Assembly (NCBI RefSeq): GCF_039654945.1
Contig: NW_027361840.1
Location: forward strand, 10,664,001 to 10,728,000
Origin: Dendrobates tinctorius
Taxonomy: Eukaryota
Direction of reading: 5' to 3'
DNA length: 64,000 bases
Positions 9,514 to 56,963 of the stretch are shown here, piece after piece; positions within the stretch are counted from its first letter, which is position 1, and each line of letters opens with the position of its first letter. The position numbers were made by a program, and so were the translations under genes. A model generated the notes under the pieces. The model was not told the DNA's origin, searched no databases, and saw nothing but the letters and a program-made list of their open reading frames with translations.

Positions 9514-9549
9514 ATGGAGCGCCCGTTGATTTCGGAGACTCTGGCGCAG
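9514..9549 (+). CDS. KRAB gene coding exon 1 ([12 protein letters not shown])
   Basis: AACATGG strong Kozak context in the CpG island; donor CAG|GTAGGA, phase 0, matches the phase-0 start of the KRAB-A exon. Confidence 0.75.
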
Positions 9550-35300: not shown

Positions 35301-38300
35301 TGCAGTTCATGGCCAAATAACGGACTTAAGGTCTTCTGGCTATAGCCGCCGGATCAGTAGTTAGAATCCCCTTTTAGGTGGTAAAAATACATTTTTTTTC
35401 TTTTTTTTTTTTTCCAATCGTCTTGTGTCACTTTGCATACTTTCTGAAAAGCATTTGAAGGGTTAATAAACTAACGGAAAGCAATTTTCAATATGTCGAG
35501 AGGCGCTGCTTTTAAAATATTATCACTTTTGGGGGATATATATTGGCCCCCCAAAGTAATTTCAAAACTGAATTGGTCCCTTAAAGTTCTGTAAATTTTC
35601 CTTGCAAAACAATGAAAAATTACTGCTACATTTTTAAACCTTTCAATATGTTAACAAAATGGAGTTGATGTAAAGCAGACATGAGGGAAATGTTATTTAT
35701 TATTGTCTTTGTGTGTTTTGACTGTCTGGATTTAAGAGATAATCAAAGTTTGAAAAATGCTAATTTTTTTTGAAAATTTTTTCTCAAATTTCTGATATTT
35801 TTAGAAATAAACAAAACATATCAACATAAGTTTACCATTATCGTAAAGTATATTGTGCCATGAAAAAACAACGTCCAAATCAATTGGAAATATTGACGCG
35901 TTGCAGAGTTATCGCTACATAAAATGACAATAGTCAGATTTCAAAAATTTGGCCGTCATTAAGGGGTTAAATCAAATTGGTGATATTGTTGTCCAATTTA
36001 GTTCTCTTATTTATTCCATTGTTTTACAGGATATCGCATCCCAAAACCAGACATTGTGTCCCGTATTGAGCGGGGAGAAGAACCATGCGTTGATGCCAGC
36101 AAGAAGTCGAAACAGCAAGAACCACAGCCAGAGGGCACCCCAGATGGCAGCAAAGGTGCGCAGTGTCTATTATATTTCCTAATATTTAATATGCAAATAA
36201 AACTGGAATCATTTCTAAGGTACTAAACTGTCAGGGTAGAAACAAGGGCTTTATAAGCATCTAATTGCCTCTATATACAAGAATATACGGTAACTACTAT
36301 AATGCTGCCCCTATGTACAAGAATATAACTACTATAATACTGCTCCTATGTACAAGAATATAACTACTATAATACTGCCTCCTATGTACAAGAATATAAC
36401 TACTATAATACTGGCCCCTATGTACAAGAATATAACTACTATAATACTGCCCCTATGTACAAGAATATACGGTAACTACTATAATACTGCTCCTATGTAC
36501 AAAAATTTAACTACTATAATACTGCCCCTATGTACAAGAATATAACTACTATAATACTGCTCCCTATATACAAGAATATAACTACTATAATACTGCCTCC
36601 TATGTACAAAAATATAACTACTATAATACTGCCTCCTATGTACAAGAATATAACTACTATAATACTGCCCCTATGTACAAGAATATAACTACTGTAATAC
36701 TGCCCCTATGTACAAGAATATAACTGCTATAATACTGCTCCTATAGTAATTATATTCTTGTACATAGAGGCAGTATTATAGTAGTTATATTCTTGTACAT
36801 AGGGGCAGTATTATAGTAGTTATATTCTTGTACATAGGAGCAGTATTATAGTAGTTATATTCTTGTACATAGGAGCAGTATTATAGTAGTTATATTCTTG
36901 TACATAGGAGGCAGTATTATATACAAGAATATAACTACTGTAATACTGCCCCTATGTACAAGAATATAACTACACTGCGTGCAGAATTATTAGGCAAGCT
37001 GTATTTGAGAGGATTCTTTTTATTATTGAACAACTACACTCACTGGCCACTTTATTAGGTACACCTGTCCAACTGTGTGTTAAGACTTAATTTCTAATCA
37101 GCCAATCACATGGCGGCAACTCAGTGCATTTAGGCATGTAGACATGGTCAAGACAATCTCCTGCAGTTCAAACCGAGCATCAGTATGGGGAAGAAAGGTG
37201 ATTTGAGTGCCTTTGAACATGGCATGATTGTTGGTGCCAGAAGGGCTGGTCTGAGAATTTCAGAAACTGCTGATCTACTGGGATTTTCACGCACAACCAT
37301 CTCTAGGGTTTACAGAGAATGGTCCGAAAAAGAAAAAAAATCCAGTGAGCGGCAGTTCTGTGGCCGGAAATGCCATGTTGATGCCAGAGGTCAGAGGAGA
37401 ATGGGCAGACTGGTTCGAGCTGATAGAAAGGCAACAGTGACTCAAATTGCCACCCGTTACAACCAAGGTAGGCAGAAGAGCATCTCTGAACGCACAGTGC
37501 GTCGAACTTTGAGGCAGATGGGCTACAGCAGCAGAAGACCACACCGGGTACCACTCCTCTCAGCTAAGAACAGGAAACTGAGGCTACAATTTGCACAAGC
37601 TCATCGAAATTGGACAGTAGAAGATTGGAAAAACGTTGCCTGGTCTGATGAGTCTCGATTTCTGCTGCGACATTCGGATGGTCGGGTCAGAATTTGGCGT
37701 AAACAACATGAAAGCATGGATCCATCCTGCCTTGTATCAACGGTTCAGGCTGGTGGTGGTGGTGTCATGGTGTGGGGAATTTTTTCTGGGCACTCTTTGG
37801 GCCCCTTGGTACCAATTGAGCATCGTTGCAACGCCACAGCCTACCTGAGTATTGTTGCTGACCATGTCCATCCCTTTGTGACCACAATGTACCCAACATC
37901 TGATGGCTACTTTCAGCAGGATAATGCGCCATGTCATAAAGCTCGAATCATCTCAGATTGGTTTCTTGAACATGACAATGAGTTTACTGTACTCAAATGG
38001 CCTCCTCAGTCACCAGATCTCAATCCAATAGAGCATCTTTGGGATGTGGTGGAACGGGAGATTCGCATCAGGGATGTGCAGCCGACAAATCTGCGCCAAC
38101 TGTGTGATGCCATCATGTCAATATGGTCCAAAATCTCTGAGGAATGCTTCCAGCACCTTGTTGAATCTCTGCCACGAAGAATTGAGGCCGTTCTGAAGGC
38201 AAAAGGGGGTCCAACCCCTTACTAGCATGGTGTACCTAATAAAGTGGCCAGTGAGTGTATGTTCTCAATCAACCCAAAAGACTCATAAATATCAAAGCTT

Positions 38301-43600: not shown

Positions 43601-46600
43601 TGCGCCATATATACTGTATTTTTCGGACTATAAGACGCACTTTTTTCCTCCCATAATGTGGAGGAAAATGTGGGGTGCATCTTATAGTCCGGATGTACCA
43701 GCTGTGCTGGGGAGGTAGGGGAGCAGTTTCGGCGGAGCAGTGGGTCACAGAGGCAGGAGCCTGCGGCTAACTCCTGTGCCCGCTGCTAAAGAGAAATGAA
43801 TATTCATTGCATTCCACGCCCATGGGTGTGGAGGGCAATGAATATTCATTTCTTTTTGGCATCCTGGTATGATTGGCCCCATCCCGTTCTTGGTATGCAT
43901 GGCCCCATCACAAAAGATAAAAAAAAATTACACTTACCTTCCTGCGCTCCCTTGCAGCTTCCTGCTTCGGTGCCAGCAGCTGCTTTATGCTTGTGAGCAG
44001 CGCATGGCAGGGACGTCATGCGCTGCTCACAAGCAGATCACAGTTGCCAGTATACTTACCGGGACTGTTCATCGCAGAGAGATTAAGATAAATGAATATT
44101 TACGTGGCCGCCGGCAGCAGCAGCAAGGCTCCGGCTGAGACTGTGTGCGCTACTGAAGAAGAATGAATACTCACTGCTCCCTGCAATGAACAGTCCCGGC
44201 TAGTATTCCGGTAGCTGTGCCTGCTTGTGAGCAGCGTACGACGTCTTGAATGTGGTTTTGAGCACCTTGAGGGGTGCAGTTTTTAGAATGGTGTCTGTCA
44301 CCCCACATGTGATGTGGTCCCTTACAAAAATAAAAAAAATTTTGTTGGAAAAATGACAAATTGCTGCTCAATTTTAAACCTTTCTAATTTACTACTTTAA
44401 CAAAAAGTTTCAAAAATTTCTGATGTAAAGTAGACATGAGACGTGAGAAATGTTATTTATGAATTATGTTGTGTGACATAATCTCATTTAAGGGCATAAA
44501 AATGCCCGCTGCAATAGAAAAACCGGTGAGTGTTGCTTTAGGATGGTAGTCCTGCCTTACATTTCAGCAATGTATCTGATCCATCCTTTATCTCCTTCTT
44601 TCCAGATTCTCAGCCGGTGATTAAGGTGGAGCGGGAGTCTCCAGAAGCCTCCACTCCTATGGCTCCAAGTGAGATTTCCTCATCGCAGGAGCGCAGCGGA
44701 GCTCAGTGCCCACGTTGCGGGATGTTCTGCAATAACCAGTGCAGAATGGGATTTCAGTGGAATGCAACAGGGATGTATCCCACATCTCCTATGGAAGGAA
44801 ATCATGCGAAGCCATATATGACCCCTCCACCTGCTTACTTTAATGGGAGCCCAATATCACCTGGATTTGCCAGTAGGGGCGAAGGAATGTCACATCCCAC
44901 CTCTCCGATGGCTGCTTATGGAAATGCAGGAATGGTTCCTTTGTCTCCACACTATCCTGGTCCCAGCTACAGAAATGCCACCGACCCCAGCCCCCCCTAT
45001 CCAGTGCCAGAGCGGCATGGAAATCAAGTCTTTGCTTATGAGCAAATGCCCATGGGGCCACCCAGTAGTCATGTCGGTAAGTGTCCAGTTAGAAGGAAAG
45101 CTTGAGTCTGTGTCGGTTTGTTGCAGGAACTGGGCTACATTAGTTGTTGACTAATGGCTCTGTCACACACAGCGAGATCGCTGATTTTATGACGCCAAAG
45201 TGATCTCGCCTGCGAGATCGCTGTGTGTGACATGTATCAGCGCCGGCTCCCCCGCCGGGTATCGCTGATCGCACTCCAACGTCCTGGGCCATTTTTTGAT
45301 CATTGGTCTCCCGTTGGCCAGCGCGCATCGCTGCGAGAGACCAACGATCAGCGACACTGGATGGATACCCGCTGTTTACCTTGGATACCAGCTTGCTCAC
45401 TGGTCCTGATCGCTGGTGGGTCTGTCTAACGATGTCCCAGCGATCCCATCCACGTCAGATCGTTGGTGGGATCGCTGGGACATTGAAGCGTGTAACGGGG
45501 CCTTAACATTCCTATTGTCCTGAATAATAGGCTGTGTTATGGAGCGGAACAAGGCATAAGATTGGTGGTAAATCTGACTTTTATCCGTACCTGTATGAAC
45601 TCTTCATGTATGGCCAAAAACAGAAGAAGATATCTCTGCTGAGCGGCAGTACAGACACTGTTTATTCTGGGTCACCCTTGCCATGATTGTTTGTTCCTCT
45701 ACACAATTTTTGATATATTGGTCCAAAATTCTGTGCTGATTCGTTTCTTAAAGGGGTTGTTGGCATTTTTTTTAAATTGTTTTTCAACAAGGCTCGGCAC
45801 CCTACTAAAAATGATTTTAAAAAAAGTCCCTCATTCACCATGGTGCTTCTGGAGTTCCCCACTGTACATCCTATTTTGGTTGTTCAGACATGTGACCAAT
45901 TCAGTCAATCACTGGCTGTGATTTTTCACATGTCTGTCCTTTCCTGAAGAGGAATCCCTGAAACGTGCATTGAACAATGGCATCTCTACAGAGGAATGTC
46001 AGGGGCTCGCTAAGGGCAGTTTCACACGTCAGTATCTCCGGTACGTGTAGTGACAGTTTTCTCACGTATCGGAGACACTGACACACGTAGACACATTCGA
46101 ATGGATGTGTCTATGCAGATGTCAGTGTGTTTTCACGGACCGTGTCCGTGTGCAAAACACGCTGACATGTCCGTTTTTGTGCACCAGCACGGATCACACG
46201 GACCCATACAGGTCAATGGGTCCGTGTAAACACGTACCGCACACGGGTGCTGTCCGTGTGCGATCCGTGTGCGTTTTTCAAAGTCAAAGGGTTAACATTG
46301 AAAATAATTTTTCAAAAACACGGATGGTACTCACGGACATACGGATGTCACACGGATGGCATACGGATGCACACGGACACGGATAGCTCCGGTACCGGTT
46401 TTTCTGGTACCAGAATTATCTGGACATGTGAAACTGCCCTAAGATAGGATACAATTTTATTTTTATATCCTGGTGTTACCTTGTTAAAAAGGGCTGGGCC
46501 GGTGTGGGTAATGGGGCTTTAGTGGTGCATTGTCCACTTCTTCATTGCTTGATGCAGCTGGACCGGAATTTCAGCTCTTCCAAAATGTATAACTTCTGGC

Positions 46601-49600
46601 GGATGACACAGGTGCGAGGTACACTGGTCTGTTCTGGGGGTGTGCAATGCTTTGTCTGATGCTGCTTGAGTTCCTGAAATGTATATAAGAAGGACCGGAC
46701 CGTGGGTACCTGTTCTGTCTCATCGGAAACTGTCGGGGCTGTCACCTGTCTGGGGGAAATGTCTAAGGGACCGGACCGATCTTGGTATCTGGGAGCAGAG
46801 GGTGTGGCTAAGGGTTTGCAGCCTGAGTGCGAAGTGGTCAGACTTGGCGGGAAGAGAGCGCGCAGCGACGAGAAGTGTATGCTCTGTCCCTCGAGCATCG
46901 TTGCAGTGCTGGCCCAAGCTTCCCCGCTGCCGACAGCCGAGGCTGTGAGGAGAGACGTACGGCATGTCTGTTGGCCACCATGAACCAAGGTGCCAAGTGC
47001 TCTGGGTCCGAAAGTACCGCGTGCCACCACAGAGATCGGGTGCAGGACCGTTTTCTGCACACCGACCACCCAGTGTATATATGCTGGGCCACGTTGGGCT
47101 CAGACAGAGCTGAAGCTTGCTCCCTCTAGCTCGCATCAGACAAGCACCGCGCCAGCTGTCGTTGGCGCCATCGCGTGATCTGAAACTTCTACAGCCTGAG
47201 GGATGACTGACAGACTAAGTGGATTCAACAAGAACTACTATCACAATATCCTTTGTTGTTCTTCATTGACTTTGCAAATTTTTTCCCGCATTTAAATTGC
47301 CTTTTACCCCCCATTTAACCTGCTCACACTTGGCGTAGTCAGCAGGATGCAGTCTCCAGGTACAGAAGAGACAGACCAAGCGGCCGGGGGTGCCCCAAGA
47401 GCCAGTATACCGCTGGGGGGCAATGTTGAGCAACCTCCCAAAGTTTACAGGGAGCAATGCTGTGCTGTGCTGTGAGACTGGACTGAGCGAGTCAGGGGTA
47501 TGTTAAGGATGCACCCCATGACTCCTGTGATGGAGGCAGAGATTGCCATGATGGTCCTGGATGGAGAGGCGAGGAGCTCCGTCATGTCCCGTCCTCCCTA
47601 AGAGCGCGATACCTTCGACCTTGTGTTACAAATATTGGAGGACATGCATGGAGATCCCACGGATGTCAGAGAATTGCGCATGCGCCTGTTTTGCCATGCC
47701 TAAGGGGAGTCCAGGACCCAATACATGAACGCGTTGCAGGAGATCCACGCTGCAATTGCTAAGTGAGATGGCATAAGCGTAGGACCCTCTGACATAGTCC
47801 TGAGAAATCAGCTAGTGGCAGGCTTTAGATATGCATTGCTTAAACAGGTTTTGCGAGAGCGTTTGCGGGTCTATCCGTGCATGATCTTTTTGGAAATTGG
47901 GGCCAAAGCATGCAAGCAAGAGCAGAGCGTGACAGTTCCAGTGGGAAGGTCTGGAACGTGGAGGTATCCGCATTGTTGGCAGTTGAACCAAGTTGGGTGA
48001 GAGAGCTTCGGAAGGAAATCCAGGACATGAGAGGAATGGTCTGATTTGAAGAACAAACCTTCAGTACCCCCCAAACCCCTCTGCAGGCCAAACTGGTCCC
48101 AAGCTTCACCATGAAATGATAGTGCCTCCCGCAGAAGGGCTGCTGGTCTGTGTTTTAACTGCAGGAGCACTGCACATTACGCACGAGGATGCGCGCGTTG
48201 GAGCAGCTAAGAAGAAAGAGAGAGAAGTCCAAATAAGTTTGGTTTCCCTGAGTCCTCTCATGTGAGCTGAAATGGATGGTCGGGCCGTCCGCTGTTTAAT
48301 TGATACCGGCTCTCAAGTAACCACTATGCCCAAGACTTTTATTTCAGGCGTCATTTCCCCAAGACAATGCGGCCTGAATGGGGCCCAGTGATAAAATTGA
48401 CGGCGACCAATCAGTTGCCCATCCCGGTCGCAGGGGTGGTCTGGATGCAGATTACTGTGTGGGGCAAAAATGTGGGCTGGAAGGGAGTCGTGTTGACCAC
48501 TGGGGACCTTGACAATGACCTCACTGTGACTTTAGGAATGAATATGTTGAAAGAACTTGGCAACATTTTGGTCACTTGGGTCATCAGATGTATTTCTGAA
48601 TCGATGGAGCCCTCACCCCCCCCCCCCCCCCCCCCAGAGAAAAGTGTTCCAACAGTTGATACGGGCAGCCCTAGAGACATCGAGTGAAGGGAGAACACTG
48701 GGTAAGGTGGTTATTCCGGCCGCTGCCAACCTCATCTTACAACCGGGTCAGACTGTGCTCACTCTACCTATCCGAGCCTGTACCCCTCTCGAAGGAGTCG
48801 AAGTCCAGATAGAACCGGCGTTCATAGAGCAACTACCTACAGGGCTCCTCGTTGTGCCAACGTTAGCCGTTGGCCACGACGGTAGTGTACCAGTGCGCTG
48901 TGTTAACCTCAGGGAAGATTATCTCATGCTTTCACCCATGAATGAAGCAGCACACATCGTGGGAATTCCAGAAGTGCGGATGCCGCTGGGGGCCGTTCAG
49001 TTGGCGGTGAAAAAAGGGATCCCTGGACGGTGGCCGTGACTGTGTTTTCTGAACCAGCCTCTAGCTACCTAAGGGAAGGACGTTGAATCCTGGAGCAGAT
49101 ACGGCCCGAATCAACGGAACTATCACCCCAACAGGTACAACAAGTGGAAGCGGTATTGGAGCAGTATTGGGATGTTTTTGCCCGCGATAATGATGATGAT
49201 TTTGGGTGTACCACAGCTATCGCCCACAAGATTCCAACAGGAAGCACCGCGCCCGTCAGAGAACGATATCGACAAATTCCACCCCAAATGTACCAGGAGG
49301 TGAAGGAGATGTCACATATGCTGCAGAGTGGGGTCATCCGAGAGAGCCAGAGTCTGTTGGCTTTGCCGATTGTCCTAGAAAGGAAAGGACGGGACCCTGC
49401 GTTTGTGTGGATTATCGGAAACTGAACGCCTGCACCGTGCAATACTCATATCCCCTATTGAGGAATTGCTGTCTGCCCTGGGTAAAGCAAAGAACTTCTC
49501 GTTGGACCTGGCCAGTGAACATTGGCAAGTGCCCATGTCCGAACATGACCGGGTGAAGACAGCATTCATACTGCCCGTGGGATTGTTCAAATTCAATCGG

Positions 49601-52600
49601 ATGTCCTTCGGCCTCACCAAGGCACCCATGACCTTTCAAGGATTGATGGAGAGATGCTTGGGAGACCTGAATTTTGAGGCTTCCCTCATCTATTTGGATG
49701 ACGTTATCGTCTACGCAGCCACGTTTTGAAGAACACCTGCAATGGCTGGAAATAGTGTTTAGTCGGCTACAGAAGCACGGTCTGAAGGTGAAACCTCGGA
49801 TGTTTCCCCTCTTCCGCCAGCAGATTGAATATCTGGGACATGTTGCATCTGCAGAGACAGTCGCTTGAGAAGATTGCAGCAGTACAGGACTGGCCCACCC
49901 CGAAGACTGTGCAGGATGTCCATGCTTTCTTTTCTGGGACTCACGGGGTACTATCGGCGGTTTGTGAAAATTTTCCCCCGTAACGTAAACTTGCCGCTGG
50001 AGTTGCTAAAAGGTAGGCCGGCCGGTGCAAGGAATCGGACCATCCAGTGGGAAAATGGCCAAGAAGCCGCTTTCCGAGCCCTAAAAATGGCTGATGCACG
50101 TGTACTGTCCTATGCAGACTTCTCGCAACCGTTCATTCTTCACACCGATGGAAGCTTACAGGGATTAGGCACTGTCCTGTCACAAATGCAGGATGGGAAA
50201 GAGCGAGTGATTGCCTTTGCAAGTCGATCTCTCCACGACTCCGAACAAAACCCAGCTAACTACAGTTCTTTCAAGCTGGAACTGCTGGCATTGGTGTGGG
50301 CGATGACCGAGAAATTCGCGGAGTACCTGTTGGGGTCTGAAGTCTTGGTACGCACCGATAACAATCCTCTGGCTCACTTAGAAAATGCGAAGCTAGGGGC
50401 CCTGGAGCAGAGATGGGTGGCCCATATGGCCAAGTACTGATACAAGATCGCCTATCGAAGAGGAGCTGAGAATAGATATGCTGATGTTTCCTGAGTGACT
50501 CACGAGCTACCCGGACCCAATCGAAATGAAGTGCTGGAGGCTGAAGAGATCCCTGAGTTTCGTATTACCACAAGGACGTTGGCGGCAACGCAGGGGCAGA
50601 TTGGGGAGGCGTCCGGGGAAGTACATACTGAGATGCTTCTGTGACGACTGGGTGCGGCTTCAGCAGGAAGATGGAGAATGTGCTCAGATGAGGCAATGGG
50701 TGGCTCTGAAACAACTTCCCAGCAAAAGGGAGTGAGACGCCTTGTCCCTGGGTACGCTGCAGATCCTTCGGCAGTGGAGGAGACTTCAACTGAAAGATGG
50801 CCTACTACATCGGAAAGTCCAGTTGGCACGAGAGTTGGGAGACACCTGACAAGTGGTGCTCCCAGAAAGGCTGTTCGACGAGGTGTCCACAGAAGCTCGA
50901 GAGAGGGGCCCACTTTGGCCAAGAGAAGACGCTCCAGTGGTTGCAGAAGTTGGTCTACCATCCTCTGCTGAAAGCTGCAGTGGATGAAGCCTGTCAACGA
51001 TGCAGGAACTGAGTTAGCTAAACCTCCAGAACAGAGGGCCCCTACATTGTGACTTCTGCTCCCCTCGAAGTGTTTGATCGACTGTAGGTCCAGCTCACCT
51101 TGGATACGAACACTGTCTGGTAATAACCGACCACTTTACTAAATTTGCTGTGGTGACTCGAACCTGGGATCAGACTGCTGAGTCAGCGGCACAGGCCATT
51201 TGCAGAGACTTTATCCAGGTCTACGGCTGCCCGAAGAAGATTCGTTCGGACCAGGGCCGGTGATGGAGGAATTGCACCACATGTATCGAATTGAGAAATC
51301 CAGGATGACACCCTACCATCCACAGAGAAATGGGGCCTGCGAGTGTTTTACCGGACGCTGATTCAGATGTTGAGAACGCTGGAGGAGGACCGGAAACTTC
51401 GCTGGCCTGAGTTCGTGGCTGAATTAGTCTGGATGTACAACAACCGGGTGCATTTCACAACTGGATACACGCCATGCACTCTGCTGTTCGGCGGAAAAGG
51501 GTGAGAAATCACCGAGATGGAACTGGATCCAGAGGAGGACTACCCGCAGGCGGGGGTGTCCACCTGGGTCCGTGAACATCGACACTGTCTGCAGACTCTA
51601 CATTGACTTGTACAGACCAAGTTTCGAGATCCAGAACATCACAATACGATTTGATTTCCCTATGATGGACAGCTCTCAAGGCTGGGGACCAGGTGCTGGT
51701 CCGAGACTAACGTCCTCTAGGCAAGTTGGAAAGCCGGTGGGAAAAGACCCCGTACTGGGTAAAACACCAGGATTGGATCCGAAGGTCATGTCTGCGAAGT
51801 TCAACCTGAAGGGGGGAAAAAGGCTCCCCCCACTAGGGTAGTCCATCAAAACATGCTATGCCCTTTCTTGTCACAAGACCCCCGACCAGCCAGAGGGAGC
51901 ACCAAGCGTTCCTGAAACACCCCCTCCTACAGCTTTCGACTTCAGGAGAGGAACAAGAGCCTGAAACTCCCAAAATAGCTGCTCCATTCAACCTGGGTGA
52001 GTCCCCCGCCCTCGCCTGCGCAACCTAACTCGACTACTCAACCTGACTTGCGCCGCACGGAGCGGTCAACAGCTGGAATACCCCCCAATCGATACAAACA
52101 GGACCAATTCATTTGGTAGCAAATTATCTGAGAGATGGAAGAGTGTCAACGTCTTTTGCAAGAACTCTTTGTCTGTGGAATGGCGAGCAAAAGGAGAGGG
52201 GGAGTGTAAGAAAAAGGATCGGACCGTGGATACCTGTTCTGTGCCGGATCCTGAACAGTCGGGCTTTCGCCTCTTTTCCAGGGAATGTTTAAGGGACCGG
52301 ACTGATCTTGGTATCAGGGAGCAGGGGGTTTGCAGCCTGAGCGCGCACGGAAATGGTCAGACTTTGAGGGAAGAAACAGCATGCAGCGAGGAGAAGCGTG
52401 TGCACTGTCCCTCGAGCATCGTTGCAGCACAGGCCCGCGCCGAGCTTCCCCGCTGCCGACAGCTGAGGCCTTGAATAGAGATGTACAGCGTGTCTGTTGG
52501 TCACCACGAATCAAGGTGCCAAGCACTTCAGCTCTGCAAGTACCGCGCGCGTGCCCCCAAAGAGAGACCGGGTGCAGGACTGTTTTCTGCACCCTGATGC

Positions 52601-55600
52601 CCCCCCCCCCAGTGTATATATTGGGTGCAGAGCTGAAGCTTGCTCCCTCTCGGCCACATCAGCAAATGGACTAGGGGCCGAGCGGAAGGTACCGGATACC
52701 GACCGCTGCCGCCAGAAGACAGATCATCGCTAACCTCTAGCTCACATCAGACAAGTATCATTTGTTGTTCTTCATTGACTTTGCATATTCTTTCCCCCCA
52801 TTTTAACTGTTTTCCTCCCTGCGTGGAGTATCCCTGTGTTAAGTAAAATCATTAATCCTTGCTCTGTCTCTTGTCCTTAGCTGCATCTCGCAACCTGCTC
52901 ACATATACTCAGTTATAAGCTGTCCTGAATATAAGCAGAGGCACCTAATTTCACCACAAAAAGCTGGGAAAACTTATTGACTCAAGTATAAGCCTGGTAT
53001 GCATGGCCCCCTCATCCCCATCCTGATATGCATGGCCCCCCCATCAGAAAAACATTAAAAAAACAAACCATTCTATTTACCTTCCTGGTGCTTTCTCACA
53101 GTATCCTGTTCGGGCTCCAGTAGCTGATTTATGCTTACAATCAGCGCATGGCAGTGACATCATGCACTGCTTATAAGCAAAGGACATCTGCCGTAATACT
53201 CACTGCTCTCCACTCCGAGACTATGGGTGTGTGTGGAACAGTGAATATTGATTGATCTTTAATAGCTGGCATAGTAACCTCAGCTGCTGGCTTGCTGTAG
53301 CGGCCGGGCTATCGCGTGTGACCGTTAGCAAAGGGAATATTCGCTGCTCTCCTCGCCCATGGGAGTGGAGAGCAGTGAATATTAATTCCGTTAAGTCGCA
53401 GTCACACTTCAGAGCCCAGCAGCTGCATGAAGCTGCTGCAGCTAACAGCGTGTCCACTATTAAAGAGAAATGAATATTCACTGCTTTCCACTCCCATGGG
53501 TGTGGAGAGCAGTGACTATTCATTTCTCTTAAGCAGCAGGCACAGGTGTCAGCCGTAGCAGCCGGCTCTTGCCTCCTGTGACTTGCTGCTCTGCCGCTGC
53601 CGCTCCCCCTCCCTCTTATAGTCCAAAAAATACCGTGTGACCCTCACTCAAGTATAATATGAGAGGGACTTTTTCAGCATAAAGAATGTGCTGAAAACTC
53701 TGCTTATACACGAGTATATATGGTACTTATTTTACTAGTTTTGGCGTAAGCATGTTTGGAAAGCTGAACTACAACTACATATGGACATGCTGGTGGTTTA
53801 CTGCACCCAAAGTGATGAGTATTTTAGCTTTTCCATCTACAGGAACATGATCCAACTTTTTTTTTTTTTCTTTTTCATTCTCAAATTTTGTGCAAAAAAA
53901 ACCCAAACACTTGAGGACTGTCAATGCAAAGGTCAGTGTTATACAGTGAGAAAGGTGGACATTTCTGTAAGCAGAACCATTGCAGACAGGACTCTGCTAC
54001 ACACATGTATATAGCGCAGACCCTGAATAGAGTGTGCACACGAAGTAAAGCAGAACCTAATTGGCACAATTTATTTTATCATTTCAGATCTTGAGAACAG
54101 AAATAGGAATCATCTCACTCATATGCGTGATGCAATGTTCCATGATCGGAGGAATCCTTTGTCCCCATGTCCCGGATGCGGAGCTTTTTGCAATAATCAG
54201 TGTGGAATAAACATGCACTGGGAACAAAGGCGGTTGCACCATCCTATGCCGGGGCCAACTGACGGAGCCCAGGGGCATCGATACACTTCTCCTCCCAATC
54301 CATACTATAGTGGTGGAGTCAATTCTGGTCCTTACTCAAATATCCGCCCTCCAGTCAGACATGGAGCCCCTCCAGTGAATGTTCAGGGGAATCCTGGGAT
54401 GATGCCGGTATCCTCACCATATACAGGATATCGTGGGCCTGGGGATTCTAAGTCTCCAAACTTTTTTCCCAATAAGCCAGAGCTCCCTGTGGGCAATGGC
54501 ATCCATGGAAACAACACAGCAGTCTCTTCGCCTCATGGGGCTAACCAGGGTGTGAAGTATGGAATGGTACCTGCAAACAGTAGCGGGAGTCATAGGAGGT
54601 CACAATCTATGTCTCCTCTGGCAGCTCTTGAAACCATGCCGGTGTTTGCAGCCATTAATAGTCCAGGTGCTGTTGGTGACCAGAGGAATAGACATTTACC
54701 CCAAACGGTGACCAGTAGTGATAATGGCAGAGACCGAAACCTGATCCCTTCTTATAACAACAGTCAACAACAACAACTACATTTTTCTATCCATGGTAGC
54801 AAAATTACCAGATTACATCAAGTGACTTCAGCGACTGGGCAACTGAAACCCGGGGAAGCCGCTGTAAATAAGACTGCCTTGCCATTAGATGGAGGGGACA
54901 AAGCTTCCAAACAAGCTCTTCCCTCATCCCCCACTTTTGTTGCTCAAGAAATGAAGCAGGTCATAGTAAATGAAAGTCATGCCACTAAAAGGCCTGCTTC
55001 CCAGACTGCTTCAGAAAGTGGGCTTCCTGTAAAAAGAGCCAGTCCACCAGTGATCATTGTTGACTGTGACGAAAAAAAACGCACTCCAAAGGCAAGATCT
55101 GCTGGGAATAACCAAGGTTCAGCTTGTGTTATGCCTCCAACCACTAAACCAGATCCTCCTGTGATGATTATTGGAATCCCGGCCCCTAAGAAGACTCTGA
55201 CACCTGAAACTAGAGAAAATAGGAGCCAAACACGCCAAACACCACCTATTACCATCAGTAATGTTCGGAGTGCAGGCGAGCCTGAAAAAAGGTGCCCAAC
55301 ACCACCAATCACCATCAGTAATGTTCGTGGTGCCGGAAGTCTGGAAATTAAACAAATGAGGCCCCCAACTCCACCAATTACCATCAGCAACGTTCGGAGT
55401 ACCAGCACTCCTGAAGTGAAAGATAATAAGCGCCAGACACCACCAATTACCATCACCAATATCCGAAGTTCTGGAATTTTTTTCCCTCCGTCTCCCAGAG
55501 GGCCAATAGAAGTAAAGAAGGACTCCAATCCGATCATAATAATTGATGACAAGGATGGGGAAGGAATGGCTGAACCACCACACACGTCTCCCACCAGTAG

Positions 55601-56963
55601 CTCAAATATTGAGCTTAAAACTTCTGCACCTGTGACAACTCAACCAACCAACCCCATAAATAACCGGGAACCTCCTCCTGCTGCTCTGCCTTCCTCAACC
55701 AATAAAACGATCCAAACTCAAGGTGCCCAACAGGGTGGTGCAGTTTTGGTCAATAAAGTTCAGGTGCCACAGCCCTCTCCAATTATTGTCACTGGAGGTA
55801 CAAATCTGGGCAACCAGCAATTGTCTGTCCCCGTGAATGGCAATCAAAGTATCATGTTGACTTTCCCTGTCTCGGTCGGTAGTTCAGGAATCGTGCTTGC
55901 AACACCTCTGAATATTGCAGAAAACCAGATCTCTGGCATAAAACAGAACAACAGAATGACCATTAATAAGAACACAAGACTCGTGCAAACAAATGCCATT
56001 AACACTCCAAGAACTGTCAATCCTAAATTTAGCTCTGTGGCCGTCACACCAGTAATTGGGCAAACAAATACACTTTCTGTACCTCCTGGGCAAGCAAAAC
56101 CTGTGGCCATCAATGTTAACAAAACAGGCACCATCAACAGTGCGCTCGGTGTAAAAAACTCTAACCTTCCAAAGGTTGGTGGTGCAGCCCTCAAGGCCGT
56201 TCCGGTATCTGCTGCGGGAAATCCGCCTGTGGGACAAGCTATTCCACTATTTGTAGATGCTAATTCTGGGTTAATTCTAACTGGATCCGCTGTTCCTTCC
56301 AAGGATAATGTCTCGTCCGGCCTTGGCAATGCAACTGTCGTCACCGTAAATGGGAATGTGGTTGGTGGAAAACTGGCGTTTAGCAACCTTTCTCCTGTAA
56401 ATGGACTTTACATAGGCAATAATTCCCCTGTTGCTCTGGCAGGCAATGCCAATAACTTTAATAGTAAAGGAACATTGAGCATCAACAATCCCACCATCCT
56501 CACCCTGAATGGCAACTTAGGCATTGGCAATTCGGGATCAGTTGCAGCACCAATCGCGAATATTGCTTCTGTCGGTGCAAACAGGACTTTGCAGGTGGCT
56601 GCCCCGACTGCAGCTCCTACTGTGTTGGGTAACGGTAGTCAGCAGAATACAGTGTTTATAAGAAAAATTGGCGAGCAGAGTGTGGTATCCACCCAACCCA
56701 ACAGTGAGCAGCATCCAGCAGTTGTATTGGAAAGACTGTTTAAATGCAGCAAATGTGATCAGAAGTTTAATTCCCTCGAGAACTTGACTTCCCATCAAGC
56801 TGTTCACAGACCCACGGGCGTCCCAGCCAGTGGACATGCTGGTGAATCGGCCTCCAAAAACTCTAACCAAGTACTTCCAGGAACGAGAGAGGATGATGCT
56901 CCGACTATATTGTACACTACACAGGGAGACGACGGCAGCACGGTCTACGTCGTTACAGTATAG
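9514..56963 (+). CDS. KRAB-domain protein with a single C2H2 zinc finger, 1209 aa; join(9514..9549,34429..34549,36030..36155,44606..45076,54088..56963)
   Basis: Five exons with GT-AG sites and phases 0/1/1/1; lengths 36+121+126+471+2876=3630 nt in one open frame ending TAG; KRAB-A and KRAB-B recognisable; small extra exons cannot be excluded. Confidence 0.85.
9781..12140. repeat. 71-bp VNTR (with 56-bp deletion variants) in intron 1
   Basis: Unit CCATCTATAGCATAGACCCCC[A/G]CATACAGGACCCCCAGATACAGAAACCCCCCTGTATACAGAGCTCC(TGA/CCA), >30 copies; the ORF-track periodicity of 71 nt agrees. Confidence 0.95.
12140..12960. repeat. Degenerate longer (~160 bp) units related to the 71-bp VNTR
   Basis: Recurrent CCAGTCCTCCCGACCATCTATACACCATAGTCTATAGGGATGTC...ATCAGATCCCCAGGACCCC blocks. 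Confidence 0.75.
12962..13658 (-). mobile_element. Tc1-type DNA transposon fragment (one TIR plus decayed transposase C-terminus)
   Basis: TA|CAGCTCTGGCAAAAATTAAGAGACCACTG end; ORF 13230..13490 with [12 protein letters not shown]; truncated by a Penelope-like insert. Confidence 0.8.
13659..14140 (-). mobile_element. 5'-truncated Penelope-like element (GIY-YIG C-terminus plus pLTR with degenerate hammerhead)
   Basis: Minus strand reads [23 protein letters not shown], then after a frameshift [22 protein letters not shown] (PLE endonuclease tail); followed by CTGATGAAGAGACCTGAGTAATCTCGAAAGCTGC at 13706-13740. Confidence 0.75.
14578..16211 (-). mobile_element. Tc1/mariner element, DD38E (Intruder-like), long TIRs, decayed transposase
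   Basis: Termini CAGTACAGACCAAAAGTTTG and CAAACTTTTGGTCTGTACTG, inverted repeats >200 bp; ORF 14741..15145 QQDN...SPDLNPIE with 38 residues between D and E. Confidence 0.88.
16510..16903. mobile_element. Non-autonomous palindromic MITE (Harbinger/PIF-like, AGCGAT-rich family)
   Basis: Imperfect TIRs GTCACACTTAGCGAT / ATCGCAGTGTGTAAC; near-identical body at 62809-63177 and a related element at 45155. Confidence 0.7.
17850..18077. mobile_element. Palindromic MITE relic with two inverted CTCF-like motifs
   Basis: GCCACCACTAGGGGGAGC at 17918 and GCTCCCCCTAATGGTGGC at 17985; complementary outer arms. Confidence 0.6.
18237..18910. mobile_element. Degenerate MITE hosting a younger MITE
   Basis: TAA|GGCTATGTTTACAC ... 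GTGTGAACATG imperfect TIRs. Confidence 0.5.
18512..18756. mobile_element. Young palindromic Harbinger-type MITE
   Basis: Perfect TIR GGCCTGTTTCACACTTCCGTTTTT; TTA target duplication on both sides; internal ACGGATCCGT repeats. Confidence 0.88.
19113..19427. repeat. 46-bp tandem repeat, ~7 copies
   Basis: GTGTGACCAGTATAGCCTGAAATTGTTCTCGGCAGCACAT[C/T][A/G]TCCT. Confidence 0.92.
19840..19950 (+). mobile_element. L2/SINE 3'-tail fragment
   Basis: TGTAAAGCGCCATGGAATAAATGGCGCTATATAAAT...AATAATA stem-loop tail like that of the L2 at 1336. Confidence 0.6.
20068..20737. repeat. 32-bp GC-rich VNTR, ~21 copies
   Basis: GTGTCCCCCGGGCCGCCTGTAGTGTTGCC[T/G]CC. Confidence 0.96.
21842..23829. mobile_element. 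T2/Kolobok-like MITE interrupted by a nested element
   Basis: TTAA|AGAGGCGCTCCCATCAAAGT ... ACTTTGATGGGAGGAGTGCTTCT|TTAT with complementary arms. Confidence 0.65.
21998..23628. mobile_element. Non-autonomous hAT-like element
   Basis: Termini TAGGGATCAGTGAACCC and GGGTCCGCTCATCCCTA; internal inverted segments; no 8-bp TSD recognisable. Confidence 0.55.
23893..23982 (-). mobile_element. Penelope-like pLTR relic, same family as 13659, with hammerhead stem II deleted
   Basis: CAGTGGTTGATGCCTTTTAATG...AACTGAAAAGATGGTAACACATTGCAG...TCTCTTCATCAGGC...TAATACAAAATC aligns with 13659-13762. Confidence 0.7.
24645..25265 (-). mobile_element. Non-autonomous Helitron
   Basis: Minus strand: A|TCTACTATAT 5' end; subterminal hairpin CCCGAT-GCGATAGA-ATCGGG; 3' end CTAG|T; inserted between A and T with no TSD; internal ~56-bp tandem repeat at 24878-25058. 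Confidence 0.8.
25827..27553. mobile_element. T2/Kolobok-like MITE with internal insertions
   Basis: TTAA|AGTGAACCTGTGACATCATTTCAAGCATCTAAAC ... GTTTAGATGCTTGAAATGACGTGACAGATCCCC|TTAA. Confidence 0.65.
26185..26765. repeat. ~39-bp G-rich VNTR, ~15 copies
   Basis: GGGGAGG[C/A]TGTGGGGGGGG(G)CCCAGATGCAGTGTATGT. Confidence 0.93.
28020..28163 (+). mobile_element. 144-bp retroposed insert (Penelope-like solo pLTR) with 14-bp TSD
   Basis: TTACTAATTGGACC at 28006-28019 and 28164-28177; starts with a hammerhead-like GAA-GCGC-loop-GCGC-GAAATGGCCGTT; internal AATAAA. Confidence 0.65.
28639..29540. mobile_element. Harbinger-type MITE with long central palindrome
   Basis: TAA|GGCTATGTGCACATGT ... ACGTGTGGACGCATCC|TTA; arms ~28950-29065 and ~29085-29200 are complementary; same family as 40235 and 40980. 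Confidence 0.82.
29785..30076. mobile_element. Penelope-like inverted pLTR relic with degenerate hammerhead in the spacer
   Basis: ~120-bp inverted arms (29785-29904 and ~29955-30076); minus strand 29902-29945 reads GAGACCGTGAAGGCGG-CAGTTGTAA-CCGCCGAAACGCGTAGTCT. Confidence 0.65.
30656..31085. mobile_element. Penelope-like insertion with inverted pLTRs, TSD up to 14 bp
   Basis: GAGATCTGGAGACT duplicated at 30642-30655 and 31086-31099; perfect 114-bp inverted repeat 30725-30838 / 30975-31088 containing a hammerhead core and AATAAA/ATTAAA motifs. Confidence 0.8.
30793..30856 (-). ncRNA. Type I hammerhead ribozyme motif
   Basis: AGUACA-gucucac-GUACA CUGAUGA A GGUC-AUA-GACC GAA ACG-ucuauu-UGU A UGUAC UGUACU: conserved core, 4-bp stem II, 3-bp stem III, GUA site, 5+6-bp bulged stem I; folded by eye. 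Confidence 0.72.
32590..33070. mobile_element. Degenerate palindromic MITE
   Basis: Complementary arms TTGTCAGGTTGGCAGTGTTAAA...ATGATACCTGGGGTGAAGA and TCTTCACCCCAGATATCAT...AACACTGCCAGCCTGACA. Confidence 0.6.
34429..34549 (+). CDS. KRAB gene exon 2: KRAB-A box
   Basis: Polypyrimidine tract+CAG|[40 protein letters not shown](G)|GTAAGG; classic KRAB-A exon, phase 0-1. Confidence 0.93.
34838..35253. mobile_element. Almost fully palindromic Harbinger-type MITE
   Basis: TAA|AGCTAGTTTCACACTAG ... CTAGTCTGAAACTAGCC|TAA; whole body self-complementary. Confidence 0.82.
35420..35970. mobile_element. piggyBac-like non-autonomous element end
   Basis: Ends ...CATTAAGGGG|TTAA; shares GATGTAAAG[C/T]AGACATGAG...AAATGTTATTTAT with 44420-44460; left boundary uncertain. 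Confidence 0.45.
36030..36155 (+). CDS. KRAB gene exon 3: KRAB-B box
   Basis: TTTTACAG|(G)[41 protein letters not shown]|GTGCGC; the KPD..SR.E.GEEP KRAB-B signature; phase 1-1. Confidence 0.92.
37037..38257 (+). mobile_element. Intact Tc1/mariner element, DD36E (Incomer-like), 1221 bp
   Basis: Perfect 29-bp TIR CACTCACTGGCCACTTTATTAGGTACACC; TA TSD on both sides; uninterrupted transposase. Confidence 0.95.
37185..38225 (+). CDS. Tc1-family DD36E transposase, 346 aa
   Basis: N-terminal HTH, GRK motif, [26 protein letters not shown] with 36 residues between the second D and E. Confidence 0.95.
40235..40940. mobile_element. Harbinger-type MITE, opposite orientation to 40980
   Basis: TAA|GGCTGAGTTCACACGT ... 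ACGTGTGAATGAAGCC|TAA. Confidence 0.87.
40980..41820. mobile_element. Harbinger-type MITE, same family as 28639 and 40235
   Basis: TAA|GGCTGGGTTCACACGTA ... TACGTGTGAACGAGGCC|TTA. Confidence 0.87.
41965..42575. mobile_element. Harbinger-type MITE of a different family
   Basis: TAA|GGCCGGGGTCACACT ... AGTGTGACCCCAGCC|TAA. Confidence 0.85.
43614..44250. mobile_element. Non-autonomous TA-target DNA element fragment within a piggyBac-like left end (TTAA|CCCCTTCATGAC at ~43588)
   Basis: TA|CTGTATTTTTCGGACTATAAGACGCAC terminus; complementary arm at 53460-53635; right boundary uncertain. Confidence 0.5.
44606..45076 (+). CDS. KRAB gene exon 4: Cys module copy 1 plus Pro/Tyr/Met-rich region
   Basis: Strong acceptor CCTTTATCTCCTTCTTTCCAG| and donor G|GTAAGT; phase 1-1; frame of ORF 44617..45105; [12 protein letters not shown] homologous to exon 5. 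Confidence 0.9.
45155..45503. mobile_element. MITE (AGCGAT-rich family)
   Basis: TAA|TGGCTCTGTCACAC ... GTGTAACGGGGCCT|TAA. Confidence 0.7.
46014..46439. mobile_element. Harbinger-type MITE
   Basis: TAA|GGGCAGTTTCACA ... TGTGAAACTGCCC|TAA. Confidence 0.85.
46680..52903 (+). mobile_element. Gypsy/Ty3 LTR retrotransposon, decayed
   Basis: LTRs 46680-47328 and 52205-52903 (TGT...AACCTGCTCACA); PBS TGGCGTAGTCAGCAGGAT at 47331 (tRNA-Ser-like); PPT 52189-52204; CCHC knuckle 48151-48192; protease DTG 48302; RT YLDD 49691; RNase H then integrase; many stops and frameshifts. Confidence 0.92.
52904..53725. mobile_element. Non-autonomous DNA element(s), left terminus clipped by the LTR
   Basis: TATACTCAGTTATAAGC ... 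GCTTATACACGAGTATATATGG|TA imperfect TIRs; internal inverted arms. Confidence 0.55.
54088..56963 (+). CDS. KRAB gene exon 5: Cys module copy 2, four [10 protein letters not shown] repeats, low-complexity region, one C2H2 finger
   Basis: Acceptor TTATTTTATCATTTCAG|, phase 1, in frame with the 946-aa ORF 54123..56963; [23 protein letters not shown] at 56739-56807; no TE motifs. Confidence 0.92.

What the first reader, a model, noticed from the sequence alone, without database searches (positions are those of the whole stretch)
44707..54440. Internally duplicated ~95-aa module led by an unrecognised C-x2-C-x3-C-x3-C motif
Seen: exon 4 has [12 protein letters not shown] (44707-44742) and exon 5 has [12 protein letters not shown] (54168-54203). 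Each is followed by a Trp six residues later and by collinear blocks ([12 protein letters not shown] vs [12 protein letters not shown]; [14 protein letters not shown] vs [14 protein letters not shown]). Both exons begin in phase 1. The motif is 10/12 identical while the flanks have diverged strongly, which implies selection on it. Inference: an ancient exon duplication of a small metal-binding (Zn or Fe-S) or dimerisation module. I do not recognise it as a named domain.
Basis: partly seen in the sequence, partly recalled or inferred. Interest (0 to 1): 0.75.

Follow-up and report, generated by a model that had tools for sequence, protein, structure and literature searches.

The report
Frog-only duplicated four-cysteine protein module
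Two exons of an uncharacterised frog-specific KRAB-domain gene each encode a copy of a conserved module built around an invariant four-cysteine motif that matches no known domain family and probably holds a zinc ion, though that is untested.

Summary
[12 protein letters not shown] (44707-44742) and [12 protein letters not shown] (54168-54203) lie in exon 4 and at the start of exon 5 of a five-exon gene of Dendrobates tinctorius. Its product is a 1209-aa "uncharacterized protein" with an N-terminal KRAB box, two modules, one C2H2 finger and an invariant C-terminal tail.

- **Duplication:** the repeated unit is the whole 157-codon, phase 1-1 exon 4, not about 95 aa. The two copies align at E=2e-12 here and at 46% identity (E=5e-39) in Ascaphus.
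- **Age:** a tree of 52 modules splits copy 1 from copy 2 with 100/100 support, and each side mirrors frog phylogeny. The duplication therefore predates crown Anura.
- **Conservation:** the four Cys and the Gly are invariant in 52 of 52 modules. NNQ and the Trp are at least 90% conserved. dN/dS is 0.15-0.23.
- **Expression:** spliced transcript contigs contain exon 4 with exact boundaries.
- **Distribution:** Pfam, PDB sequences and an exhaustive profile search of 1.84 billion proteins find the module only in frog orthologues. The frog's own genome holds only these two copies.
- **Structure:** AlphaFold2 predicts no fold.

The first half of the motif is a textbook CPxCG zinc knuckle. My best reading is a small Cys4 zinc knot inside a disordered docking region. 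Metal binding and dimerisation remain untested.

The parts
9514..9549 (+). Coding part of exon 1 (start codon, 12 codons)
   Evidence: The only GT-AG model that translates exactly to P0001; tblastn match
34429..34549 (+). Exon 2: KRAB-A box
   Evidence: Pfam KRAB PF01352, 49 bits against a cut-off of 20.4; exon model
36030..36155 (+). Exon 3: KRAB-B-like segment plus linker, phase 1-1
   Evidence: Aligns to the B-box part of the ZNF568 and ZNF93 KRAB structures; exon model
44606..45076 (+). Exon 4 = module copy 1 (471 nt, 157 codons, symmetrical phase 1-1)
   Evidence: Spliced transcript contigs cover exactly 44604-45076 with 0 mismatches inside records of 1029-3731 nt
44707..44742 (+). Cys motif of copy 1, [12 protein letters not shown]
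   Evidence: Four Cys and the Gly are invariant in all 52 aligned modules
44758..44760 (+). Conserved Trp, sixth residue after the last Cys of copy 1
   Evidence: W in 23/24 copy-1 and 26/28 copy-2 sequences
54088..54593 (+). Module copy 2: 5' part of exon 5 collinear with the whole of exon 4
   Evidence: BLASTP collinearity; profile match to residues 268-384 of P0001
54168..54203 (+). Cys motif of copy 2, [12 protein letters not shown]
54219..54221 (+). Conserved Trp of copy 2
54088..56963 (+). Exon 5 (last exon, includes the stop codon): module 2, disordered middle part, C2H2 finger, C-terminal tail
56739..56807 (+). Single C2H2 zinc finger
   Evidence: Pfam zf-C2H2 E=5.7e-4, 20.6 bits, below the 25.2 cut-off. 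C, C, F, H, H are invariant in 29 orthologues. It is the only confidently folded piece of the C-terminal model, pLDDT 77
56907..56960 (+). C-terminal 18 residues, identical in 28 of 29 anuran sequences; predicted beta-hairpin

Best explanation
Shown: the two motifs are the cores of two paralogous copies of one ~115-157-aa module. Copy 1 is exon 4 and copy 2 is the 5' part of exon 5. The gene is single-copy and expressed, and it is detectable only in frogs. Its product carries a variant KRAB box, two modules, a long disordered region with short conserved hydrophobic runs, one C2H2 finger and an invariant C-terminal hairpin. The copies arose by one tandem duplication of a symmetrical phase 1-1 exon before the last common ancestor of living frogs. 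Both have been kept under purifying selection since. Inferred: each C-x2-C-G-x2-C-N-N-Q-C stretch chelates one Zn2+ through its four cysteines. The first pair is a canonical CPxCG zinc knuckle; the second pair is a CxxxC only three residues further on. This would pin an otherwise disordered Pro/Tyr/Gly/Ser-rich segment into a tiny knot, comparable in size to a retroviral CCHC knuckle. The knot would display the conserved aromatic residue at motif position 7, the NNQ triplet and the Trp six residues downstream as a docking surface for a partner protein or nucleic acid. Two such knots in tandem would give bivalent binding within a nuclear scaffold or co-repressor-type protein. My probabilities: a real, selected, duplicated and family-less module about 0.95; Zn binding by the four Cys about 0.5. 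The confidence figure given for this explanation is that of the inferred mechanism.
For: The motifs and the collinear blocks are present. In Ascaphus the two copies are 46% identical over 147 aa, E=5e-39. Every full-length orthologue has both copies. C13, C16, G17, C20 and C24 are invariant, and N21, N22, Q23 and W30 are at least 90% conserved, in 52 modules. Identity between the paralogous copies averages 74% in the motif and 32% elsewhere over 24 species. The copy-1 and copy-2 clades each have 100/100 support and each mirrors anuran phylogeny. dN/dS against Anomaloglossus is 0.21 for the copy-1 core and 0.15 for the copy-2 core. Exon 4 sits in spliced transcript contigs from two studies of the same species and from a related species. 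The consensus of the zinc knuckle is 'CPXCG' (PMC4999995), and both copies in the window match it. The sporadic sub-threshold Pfam hits of individual modules are nearly all to Cys-rich metal-binding domains: DUF2116 treble clef, PHD_3, the EHMT Cys-rich region, C1_1 and Fer4_9. The best PDB lead is the zinc-binding C1 segment CKDCGMNCHKQC of RasGRP1, at a non-significant E=1.3. The nuclear context rests on the KRAB box at 49 bits, the C2H2 finger and a 14-finger KRAB-ZNF gene ~106 kb upstream on the same strand.
Against: AlphaFold2 with the 52-sequence alignment gives no secondary structure and a mean pLDDT of 54.5; the motif block reaches only ~60. It usually folds genuine zinc fingers, but this alignment is shallow and comes from one clade. 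The C-x2-C-x3-C-x3-C spacing matched no paper in the full-text search and no solved structure by sequence. In 11 of 24 copy-1 sequences motif position 7 is a fifth Cys, so the ligand set is not certain. No metal measurement exists. The KRAB box departs from tested TRIM28-binding positions (A8, A9 and I-K-E in place of V8, F9 and M-L-E), so the co-repressor context is itself uncertain.
Confidence: 0.5

Rival explanations
1. Metal-free conserved linear motif. The module is a purely disordered interaction region, and the cysteines are conserved as direct contact residues, as a redox-sensitive switch (reversible disulfides CxxC/CxxxC) or as modification sites. They do not act as metal ligands.
For: AlphaFold2 sees no fold in the module. 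The rest of the protein outside KRAB, the C2H2 finger and the tail is also predicted disordered yet conserved in short blocks. That shows this protein relies heavily on linear motifs. dN/dS of the motif cores (0.15-0.21) is not far below that of other conserved disordered parts (0.17-0.18).
Against: Four cysteines plus a Gly invariant over the whole of crown Anura, in the exact CPxCG knuckle arrangement, is the usual signature of metal ligation. Disulfides are unlikely to be stable in a nuclear protein (general knowledge).
Confidence: 0.25
2. Metal-bridged pairing module. The two CxxC/CxxxC halves do not close on one ion within a copy. Instead they share Zn ions (zinc-hook or zinc-clasp style) or an Fe-S cluster between copy 1 and copy 2, or between two molecules, giving metal-dependent dimerisation.
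For: Two copies have been retained in every species. A predicted isoform of Phyllobates skips exactly the 157 codons of exon 4 (P0002), so valency could be regulated by splicing. One module hit Fer4_9 at E=0.024.
Against: There is no positive evidence. The spacing differs from the ferredoxin CX2CX2CX3CP motif, and a single sub-threshold hit among 52 modules is noise. The co-folding test gave no verdict and is not counted either way.
Confidence: 0.15
3. Eroded remnant of a known zinc-finger domain (C1, PHD, treble clef or C2H2 array) inherited from the ancestral KRAB-ZNF gene, so not a new module.
For: The gene lies beside a canonical 14-finger KRAB-ZNF gene. There is local resemblance to a C1-domain segment and a few sub-threshold Pfam hits.
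Against: No family is hit by more than 4 of 52 modules and none reaches its cut-off. The PDB match has E=1.3. The profile finds no C1, PHD or C2H2 protein among 1.84 billion representatives. The module has no histidines in ligand positions and none of the remaining ligands of those domains.
Confidence: 0.05
4. Chance similarity, low-complexity artefact or mis-annotated non-coding sequence.
For: The flanks are Pro/Gly/Ser/Tyr-rich, and two repetitive proteins (P0031, P0032) gave spurious profile hits.
Against: BLASTP with composition adjustment gives E=2e-12 and 5e-39. The spurious hits lack the Cys motif. The module is conserved in 28 frog proteins, under purifying selection and present in spliced transcripts.
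Confidence: 0.01

Closest known systems
Zinc knuckle turn 'CPXCG' of rubredoxin-type, zinc-ribbon and treble-clef fingers (PMC4999995)
   Same: The first five residues of both copies (CPRCG, CPGCG) match the consensus exactly. The Gly is invariant in 52/52 modules and the Pro is present in 29/52.
   Different: In those folds the second ligand pair comes from a second knuckle or a helix after a loop and beta-hairpin. Here it follows after only three residues (CxxxC), leaving no room for that architecture. No family of that kind reaches its Pfam threshold.
Retroviral-type CCHC zinc knuckle (C-x2-C-x4-H-x4-C; Pfam PF00098)
   Same: All four putative ligands lie within 12-14 residues. It starts with CxxCG and has an aromatic residue inside the knuckle. 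It occurs as tandem copies in otherwise flexible protein.
   Different: The ligand set here is Cys4 with no His. The spacing is 2-3-3 rather than 2-4-4. There is no Pfam hit. Resemblance in size and logic comes from my own knowledge and is not a tested homology.
C1 (phorbol ester/diacylglycerol) domain segment, e.g. RasGRP1 CKDCGMNCHKQC (PDB 4l9m)
   Same: Best sequence lead in the PDB: the same C-x2-C-G-x2-C-x3-C string. Two of 52 modules touch Pfam C1_1 at E>=0.007.
   Different: E=1.3 is not significant. In a C1 domain this string is part of a ~50-residue, two-zinc domain with six Cys and two His, and none of the rest is present here.
KRAB-C2H2 zinc-finger proteins (KZFPs)
   Same: The KRAB box is above the Pfam threshold. 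KRAB-A and KRAB-B lie on separate exons followed by phase-1 introns. The gene neighbours a 14-finger KRAB-ZNF gene and further KRAB exons on the same contig.
   Different: There is only one C2H2 finger instead of an array. About 1000 residues are frog-specific sequence. The KRAB-A box has A8, A9 and I-K-E where canonical boxes have V8, F9 and M-L-E. Those positions were shown by mutation to matter for TRIM28 binding and repression.
4Fe-4S ferredoxin motif C-x2-C-x2-C-x3-C-P
   Same: Four closely spaced cysteines beginning with CxxC.
   Different: The spacing is 2-3-3, not 2-2-3, and there is no trailing Pro. Only 1 of 52 modules gave a sub-threshold Fer4_9 hit.

Membership tests
KRAB box (Pfam PF01352) | Score above the Pfam gathering cut-off | tested here: met
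   49 bits against a cut-off of 20.4 for Dendrobates, Ascaphus and Xenopus tropicalis N-termini. Best PDB relatives are the ZNF568 and ZNF93 KRAB domains.
KRAB box (Pfam PF01352) | Canonical residues needed for TRIM28 binding and repression (V8, F9, L20, V27, M32-L33-E34 in ZNF10 numbering; PMC8835667) | tested here: inconclusive
   The alignment read against one search gives D7, L20 and E34 kept, V27->I, V8->A, F9->A, and MLE->IKE with no gap. This is a sequence comparison only; binding was not tested.
KRAB-C2H2 zinc-finger protein (KZFP) | Tandem array of C2H2 fingers in the last exon | tested here: not met
   One finger only, whereas the upstream neighbour has 14.
C2H2 zinc finger (PF00096) | C-x2-C-x12-H-x3-H with the conserved Phe; score above cut-off | tested here: inconclusive
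   The pattern is present and its C, C, F, H, H are invariant in 29 orthologues. It is modelled as strand-strand-helix at pLDDT 77. The Pfam score of 20.6 is below the 25.2 cut-off.
CCHC zinc knuckle (PF00098) | C-x2-C-x4-H-x4-C | tested here: not met
   No His is present, the spacing is 2-3-3 and there is no Pfam hit.
C1 domain (PF00130) | ~50-residue H-x12-C-x2-C-x13/14-C-x2-C-x4-H-x2-C-x7-C, score above cut-off | tested here: not met
   2 of 52 modules, best E=0.007, below threshold. The PDB profile match has E=1.3 over 29 residues.
4Fe-4S ferredoxin-type cluster motif | C-x2-C-x2-C-x3-C-P spacing | tested here: not met
   The spacing is 2-3-3 in all 52 modules. 1 of 52 modules hit Fer4_9 at E=0.024.
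Zinc-knuckle-containing Zn(Cys)4 sites in general | CPXCG-type knuckle supplying two ligands | tested here: met
   CPRCG and CPGCG in the window. Both Cys and the Gly are invariant in 52/52 modules. The consensus is quoted from PMC4999995.
Zinc-knuckle-containing Zn(Cys)4 sites in general | Actual stoichiometric metal binding and a metal-dependent fold | not testable with these tools
   AlphaFold2 gives no fold. This needs ICP-MS, Co(II) titration or NMR on peptides.

The most novel reading that the evidence does not exclude
The module is a new, lineage-born metal-binding mini-domain: a Cys4 'C-x2-C-G-x2-C-N-N-Q-C ... W' knot that arose in the stem lineage of frogs inside a gene derived from a KRAB-ZNF. 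It was duplicated once and has been fixed for the whole history of living frogs. It would define a domain family with no relatives in any other organism, in a frog-only nuclear protein whose variant KRAB box may no longer use TRIM28.
Probability: 0.4. Interest if true: 0.6.

Novelty: new variant of a known kind. Interest (0 to 1): 0.45.

Why it matters
If the motif binds zinc, it would be a clean case of a structured metal site born recently (in vertebrate terms) inside disordered sequence, then duplicated and frozen. That bears on how new domains originate. The host gene is also notable. It is a single-copy, strongly conserved, frog-restricted descendant of the fast-evolving KRAB-ZNF family that has kept one finger and gained ~1000 residues of conserved linear motifs. 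No paper in the searched library mentions its Xenopus orthologues (LOC100486247, LOC108718652, LOC108719787). These are directly accessible to knock-out and interaction studies in a standard model organism. If the motif is not metal-binding, it is a well-conserved but ordinary linear motif in an uncharacterised lineage-specific protein.

Tried and rejected
- **Pfam:** scans of the two exons, the whole last exon and all 52 modules gave no family above threshold.
- **PDB sequences:** a profile search found nothing significant.
- **ESM Atlas:** the last exon returned only generic C2H2 look-alikes with low shared-feature counts. Residues 95-400 gave no usable hit.
- **Wider homology searches:** three word-indexed searches (last exon, residues 800-1209, residues 1120-1209) and one exhaustive profile search found frogs only. 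P0031 and P0032 from the profile search are repetitive proteins without the Cys motif and were rejected as spurious.
- **AlphaFold2, module:** no fold, so no fold search was run on it, because low-confidence models give meaningless matches.
- **AlphaFold2, C-terminal 420 residues:** disordered except for the finger and the tail hairpin.
- **Complex prediction:** copy 1 plus copy 2 plus two Zn gave no verdict (score 0.00). I count it neither for nor against binding.
- **Literature:** searches for the Xenopus locus names and for the C-x2-C-x3-C-x3-C spacing returned 0 papers.
- **Third degenerate copy:** none found; extra profile domains all have E>0.008 and scores below 8 bits.
- **Single-motif proteins:** I first read the four with one motif as exon-4-skipped isoforms. 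One search shows that P0004, P0013 and P0023 are N-terminally truncated models that begin inside copy 1. Only P0002 (Phyllobates isoform X2) lacks the 157 codons of exon 4.
- **P0002 genomic locus:** not on record.


Full report
**1. The observation**

Translating the + strand gives [12 protein letters not shown] at 44707-44742 and [12 protein letters not shown] at 54168-54203. BLASTP with composition adjustment aligns the two regions over 144 residues: 29% identity, E=2e-12 for the single comparison. The window contains no N.

**2. The gene**

The 946-codon open frame that starts module 2 is 100% identical to a 1209-aa "uncharacterized protein" of Dendrobates tinctorius, P0001. One GT-AG model, and only one among the splice-site combinations tried, reproduces that protein exactly:

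| Exon | Coordinates | Content |
|---|---|---|
| 1 (coding part) | 9514-9549 | start codon, 12 codons |
| 2 | 34429-34549 | KRAB-A |
| 3 | 36030-36155 | KRAB-B-like, phase 1-1 |
| 4 | 44606-45076 | 471 nt, phase 1-1, module 1 |
| 5 | 54088-56963 | phase-1 start, module 2 and the rest |

Every intron after KRAB-A in this gene is also phase 1, so the shared phase alone is weak evidence for duplication.

Contigs from public runs cover exactly 44604-45076 with no mismatch inside records of 1029-3731 nt that continue with unrelated sequence on both sides. These come from three runs in two studies of the same organism, plus a related species. They are spliced transcripts, so exon 4 is expressed with the modelled boundaries.

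**3. Protein architecture**

- Pfam finds a KRAB box at residues 13-53: 49 bits against a cut-off of 20.4.
- Pfam finds a single C2H2 finger near the C-terminus: 20.6 bits, below the 25.2 cut-off. Its C, C, F, H, H are invariant in 29 orthologues.
- Nothing else is recognised.
- AlphaFold2 models the last 420 residues as disordered, except the finger (pLDDT 77) and a hairpin formed by the last 18 residues. That tail is identical in 28 of 29 frog sequences.
- The middle of the protein contains short, highly conserved hydrophobic runs flanked by acidic residues, such as P-I-I-I-I-D-D-K-D.

**4. The duplication**

- A profile built from 52 modules (alignment A1) matches exactly two places in every full-length orthologue and no third copy.
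- In Ascaphus truei the two copies are 46% identical over 147 residues, E=5e-39. The repeated unit is therefore the whole of exon 4, about 157 codons, not ~95 residues.
- A maximum-likelihood tree separates all 24 copy-1 sequences from all 28 copy-2 sequences with 100/100 support. Each half reproduces the frog phylogeny: Ascaphus first, then pipoids and Rhinophrynus, pelobatoids, then Neobatrachia.
- There was therefore one duplication before the last common ancestor of living frogs, and both copies have been retained since.
- The frog's own 6.36-Gb genome contains only these two copies at E<=0.01.

**5. Constraint**

- In the 52-module alignment the four Cys and the Gly after the second Cys are invariant. 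N, N, Q and the downstream Trp are conserved in at least 90% of sequences.
- The column profile gives C-[PQ]-x-C-G-[TAM]-[FYC]-C-N-N-Q-C-x3-[FYILV]-[QH]-W.
- Between the two copies of one species, identity averages 74% in the 12-residue motif and 32% in the rest, over 24 species. The motif is thus the most constrained part.
- The flanks are not free either. Blocks such as P-P-x-P-Y-F-N-G and G-N-x-G-M-x-P-L-S-P-x-Y-x-G-Y-R are conserved within and between copies.
- Codon comparison with the Anomaloglossus orthologue (L019) gives the following dN/dS values:

| Region | dN/dS |
|---|---|
| Copy-1 core | 0.21 |
| Copy-2 core | 0.15 |
| Whole modules | 0.17-0.23 |
| Other parts of exon 5 | 0.17-0.32 |

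The whole gene is under purifying selection, with the motif cores at the low end.

**6. Distribution**

- Three word-indexed searches of 5.8 billion proteins returned only anuran proteins. The queries were the last exon, residues 800-1209 and residues 1120-1209, the last including the invariant tail. The hits span Ascaphus, Discoglossus, Xenopus, Hymenochirus, Rhinophrynus, pelobatoids, myobatrachids, ranoids and hyloids.
- The exhaustive profile search of 1.84 billion representatives with A1 found ten proteins. Eight are frog orthologues or fragments. Two are repetitive proteins without the Cys motif.
- All source names are "uncharacterized", "hypothetical" or automatic mislabels.
- No paper in the searched library mentions the Xenopus loci.
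- Caveat: these searches see predicted proteins only. I assume, but did not verify, that annotated salamander and caecilian proteomes are in the collections. Unannotated genomes were not searched.

**7. Origin of the gene**

The nearest KRAB exons in the genome lie on the same contig and strand. The best is ~106 kb upstream of the window start, 51% identical in KRAB-A, and is followed by an open frame with 14 C2H2 fingers. The gene therefore sits at the edge of a KRAB-ZNF cluster. It most likely descends from such a gene, keeping the KRAB box and one finger.

Its KRAB-A keeps the modern spacing but reads A8, A9 and I-K-E where canonical boxes read V8, F9 and M-L-E. Mutation of MLE abolishes TRIM28 binding and repression, and F9 was required to activate an ancestral KRAB (PMC8835667). 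Whether this KRAB recruits TRIM28 is therefore open.

**8. What the motif resembles**

- No Pfam family is hit by more than 4 of the 52 modules and none reaches its cut-off. The scattered hits are nearly all Cys-rich metal-binding domains: DUF2116 treble clef, PHD_3, the EHMT Cys-rich region, C1_1 and Fer4_9.
- The best PDB sequence lead is the C1-domain string CKDCGMNCHKQC of RasGRP1, at a non-significant E=1.3.
- The first five residues of both copies match the 'CPXCG' zinc-knuckle consensus (PMC4999995).
- The second Cys pair follows after only three residues. That excludes a zinc-ribbon or treble-clef architecture. It leaves a compact site comparable in size to a CCHC knuckle; this last comparison is from my own knowledge.
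- AlphaFold2 gives no secondary structure and a mean pLDDT of 54.5 for the module. This weighs against an autonomous fold, but only weakly, because the alignment is shallow and from a single clade.
- The co-folding test of copy 1 with copy 2 and zinc gave no verdict.

**9. Reading**

Shown:
- A real, expressed, anciently duplicated module.
- Strong constraint on its four Cys.
- No known family, and restriction to frogs at current sensitivity.

Inferred, with probabilities for the mechanism:
- About 0.5: each motif is a small Zn(Cys)4 knot that organises a docking surface (aromatic residue, NNQ, Trp) within a disordered, bivalent interaction region of a nuclear scaffold protein.
- About 0.25: a metal-free or redox linear motif.
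- About 0.15: a metal-bridged pairing element.
- About 0.05: a remnant of a known finger.
- About 0.01: chance.

**10. Verdict**

This is not a member of any described family. It is best filed as a new variant of the small Cys-rich metal-site theme, in an uncharacterised frog-specific KRAB protein. Interest is moderate. It is a clean, testable candidate for a lineage-born mini-domain in a gene with tractable Xenopus orthologues, but there is no functional or metal-binding evidence yet.

Noticed in passing
window 55242-55466 (+): The four tandem [10 protein letters not shown] repeats noted by another first-stage finding vary in number between species. A strict pattern finds 4 copies in Dendrobates, Anomaloglossus, Eleutherodactylus and Bufo, 1-3 in other hyloids, and 0-1 in ranoids, pipids, pelobatoids and Ascaphus. 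Only the last copy, just upstream of the I-I-I-I-D-D block, is conserved in the family alignment. The array is a recent expansion of one older motif.
   Followed up: partly
window 55050-55064 and 55533-55547 (+): Two hydrophobic runs followed by acidic residues, V-I-I-V-D-C-D-E and I-I-I-I-D-D-K-D. The second is almost invariant across frogs. From my own knowledge they look like SUMO-interaction-type motifs. This was not tested.
   Followed up: no
window 56907-56960 (+): The last 18 residues of the protein are identical in 28 of 29 frog sequences spanning the whole order. They are modelled as a beta-hairpin. No protein outside frogs shares them. Their function is unexplained.
   Followed up: partly
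window 37185-38225 (+), intron 3: An uninterrupted 346-codon Tc1/mariner-type transposase frame (HTH_Tnp_Tc3_2, DDE_3 and HTH_23 above the Pfam cut-offs). Further Tc1 fragments lie on the opposite strand at ~31047-31943.
   Followed up: partly
window ~48400-50500 (+), intron 4: Reverse-transcriptase and RNase H pieces of an LTR-type retroelement, split over different reading frames and therefore degraded (RVT_1, RT_RNaseH). I only observed this.
   Followed up: partly
window 19898-20747, 26052-26822, 39870-40275: Three tandem-repeat blocks in introns 1-3 give long repetitive open frames on both strands. They are ordinary satellite-like DNA.
   Followed up: no
G000:C172:10557904-10560000 (L003), ~106 kb upstream of the window start: A canonical KRAB-ZNF gene on the same strand: a KRAB-A exon 51% identical to this gene's, followed by an open frame with 14 C2H2 fingers. 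More KRAB exons lie at C172:10387707, 10409260 and 10425994. The interval between it and the window holds mostly transposon-like open frames.
   Followed up: partly
P0002 (Phyllobates terribilis isoform X2); window exon 4, 44606-45076: A predicted isoform lacks exactly the 157 codons of exon 4, giving a one-module protein. Because the exon is phase 1-1, skipping keeps the frame. I did not check whether this isoform exists in reads.
   Followed up: no
alignment A1, motif position 7: In 11 of 24 copy-1 sequences the aromatic residue at motif position 7 is replaced by a fifth cysteine (C-G-T-C-C-N-N-Q-C). This occurs in ranoid sequences, several hyloids and Hymenochirus. Copy 2 always has Phe or Tyr there. 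This is unexplained.
   Followed up: no
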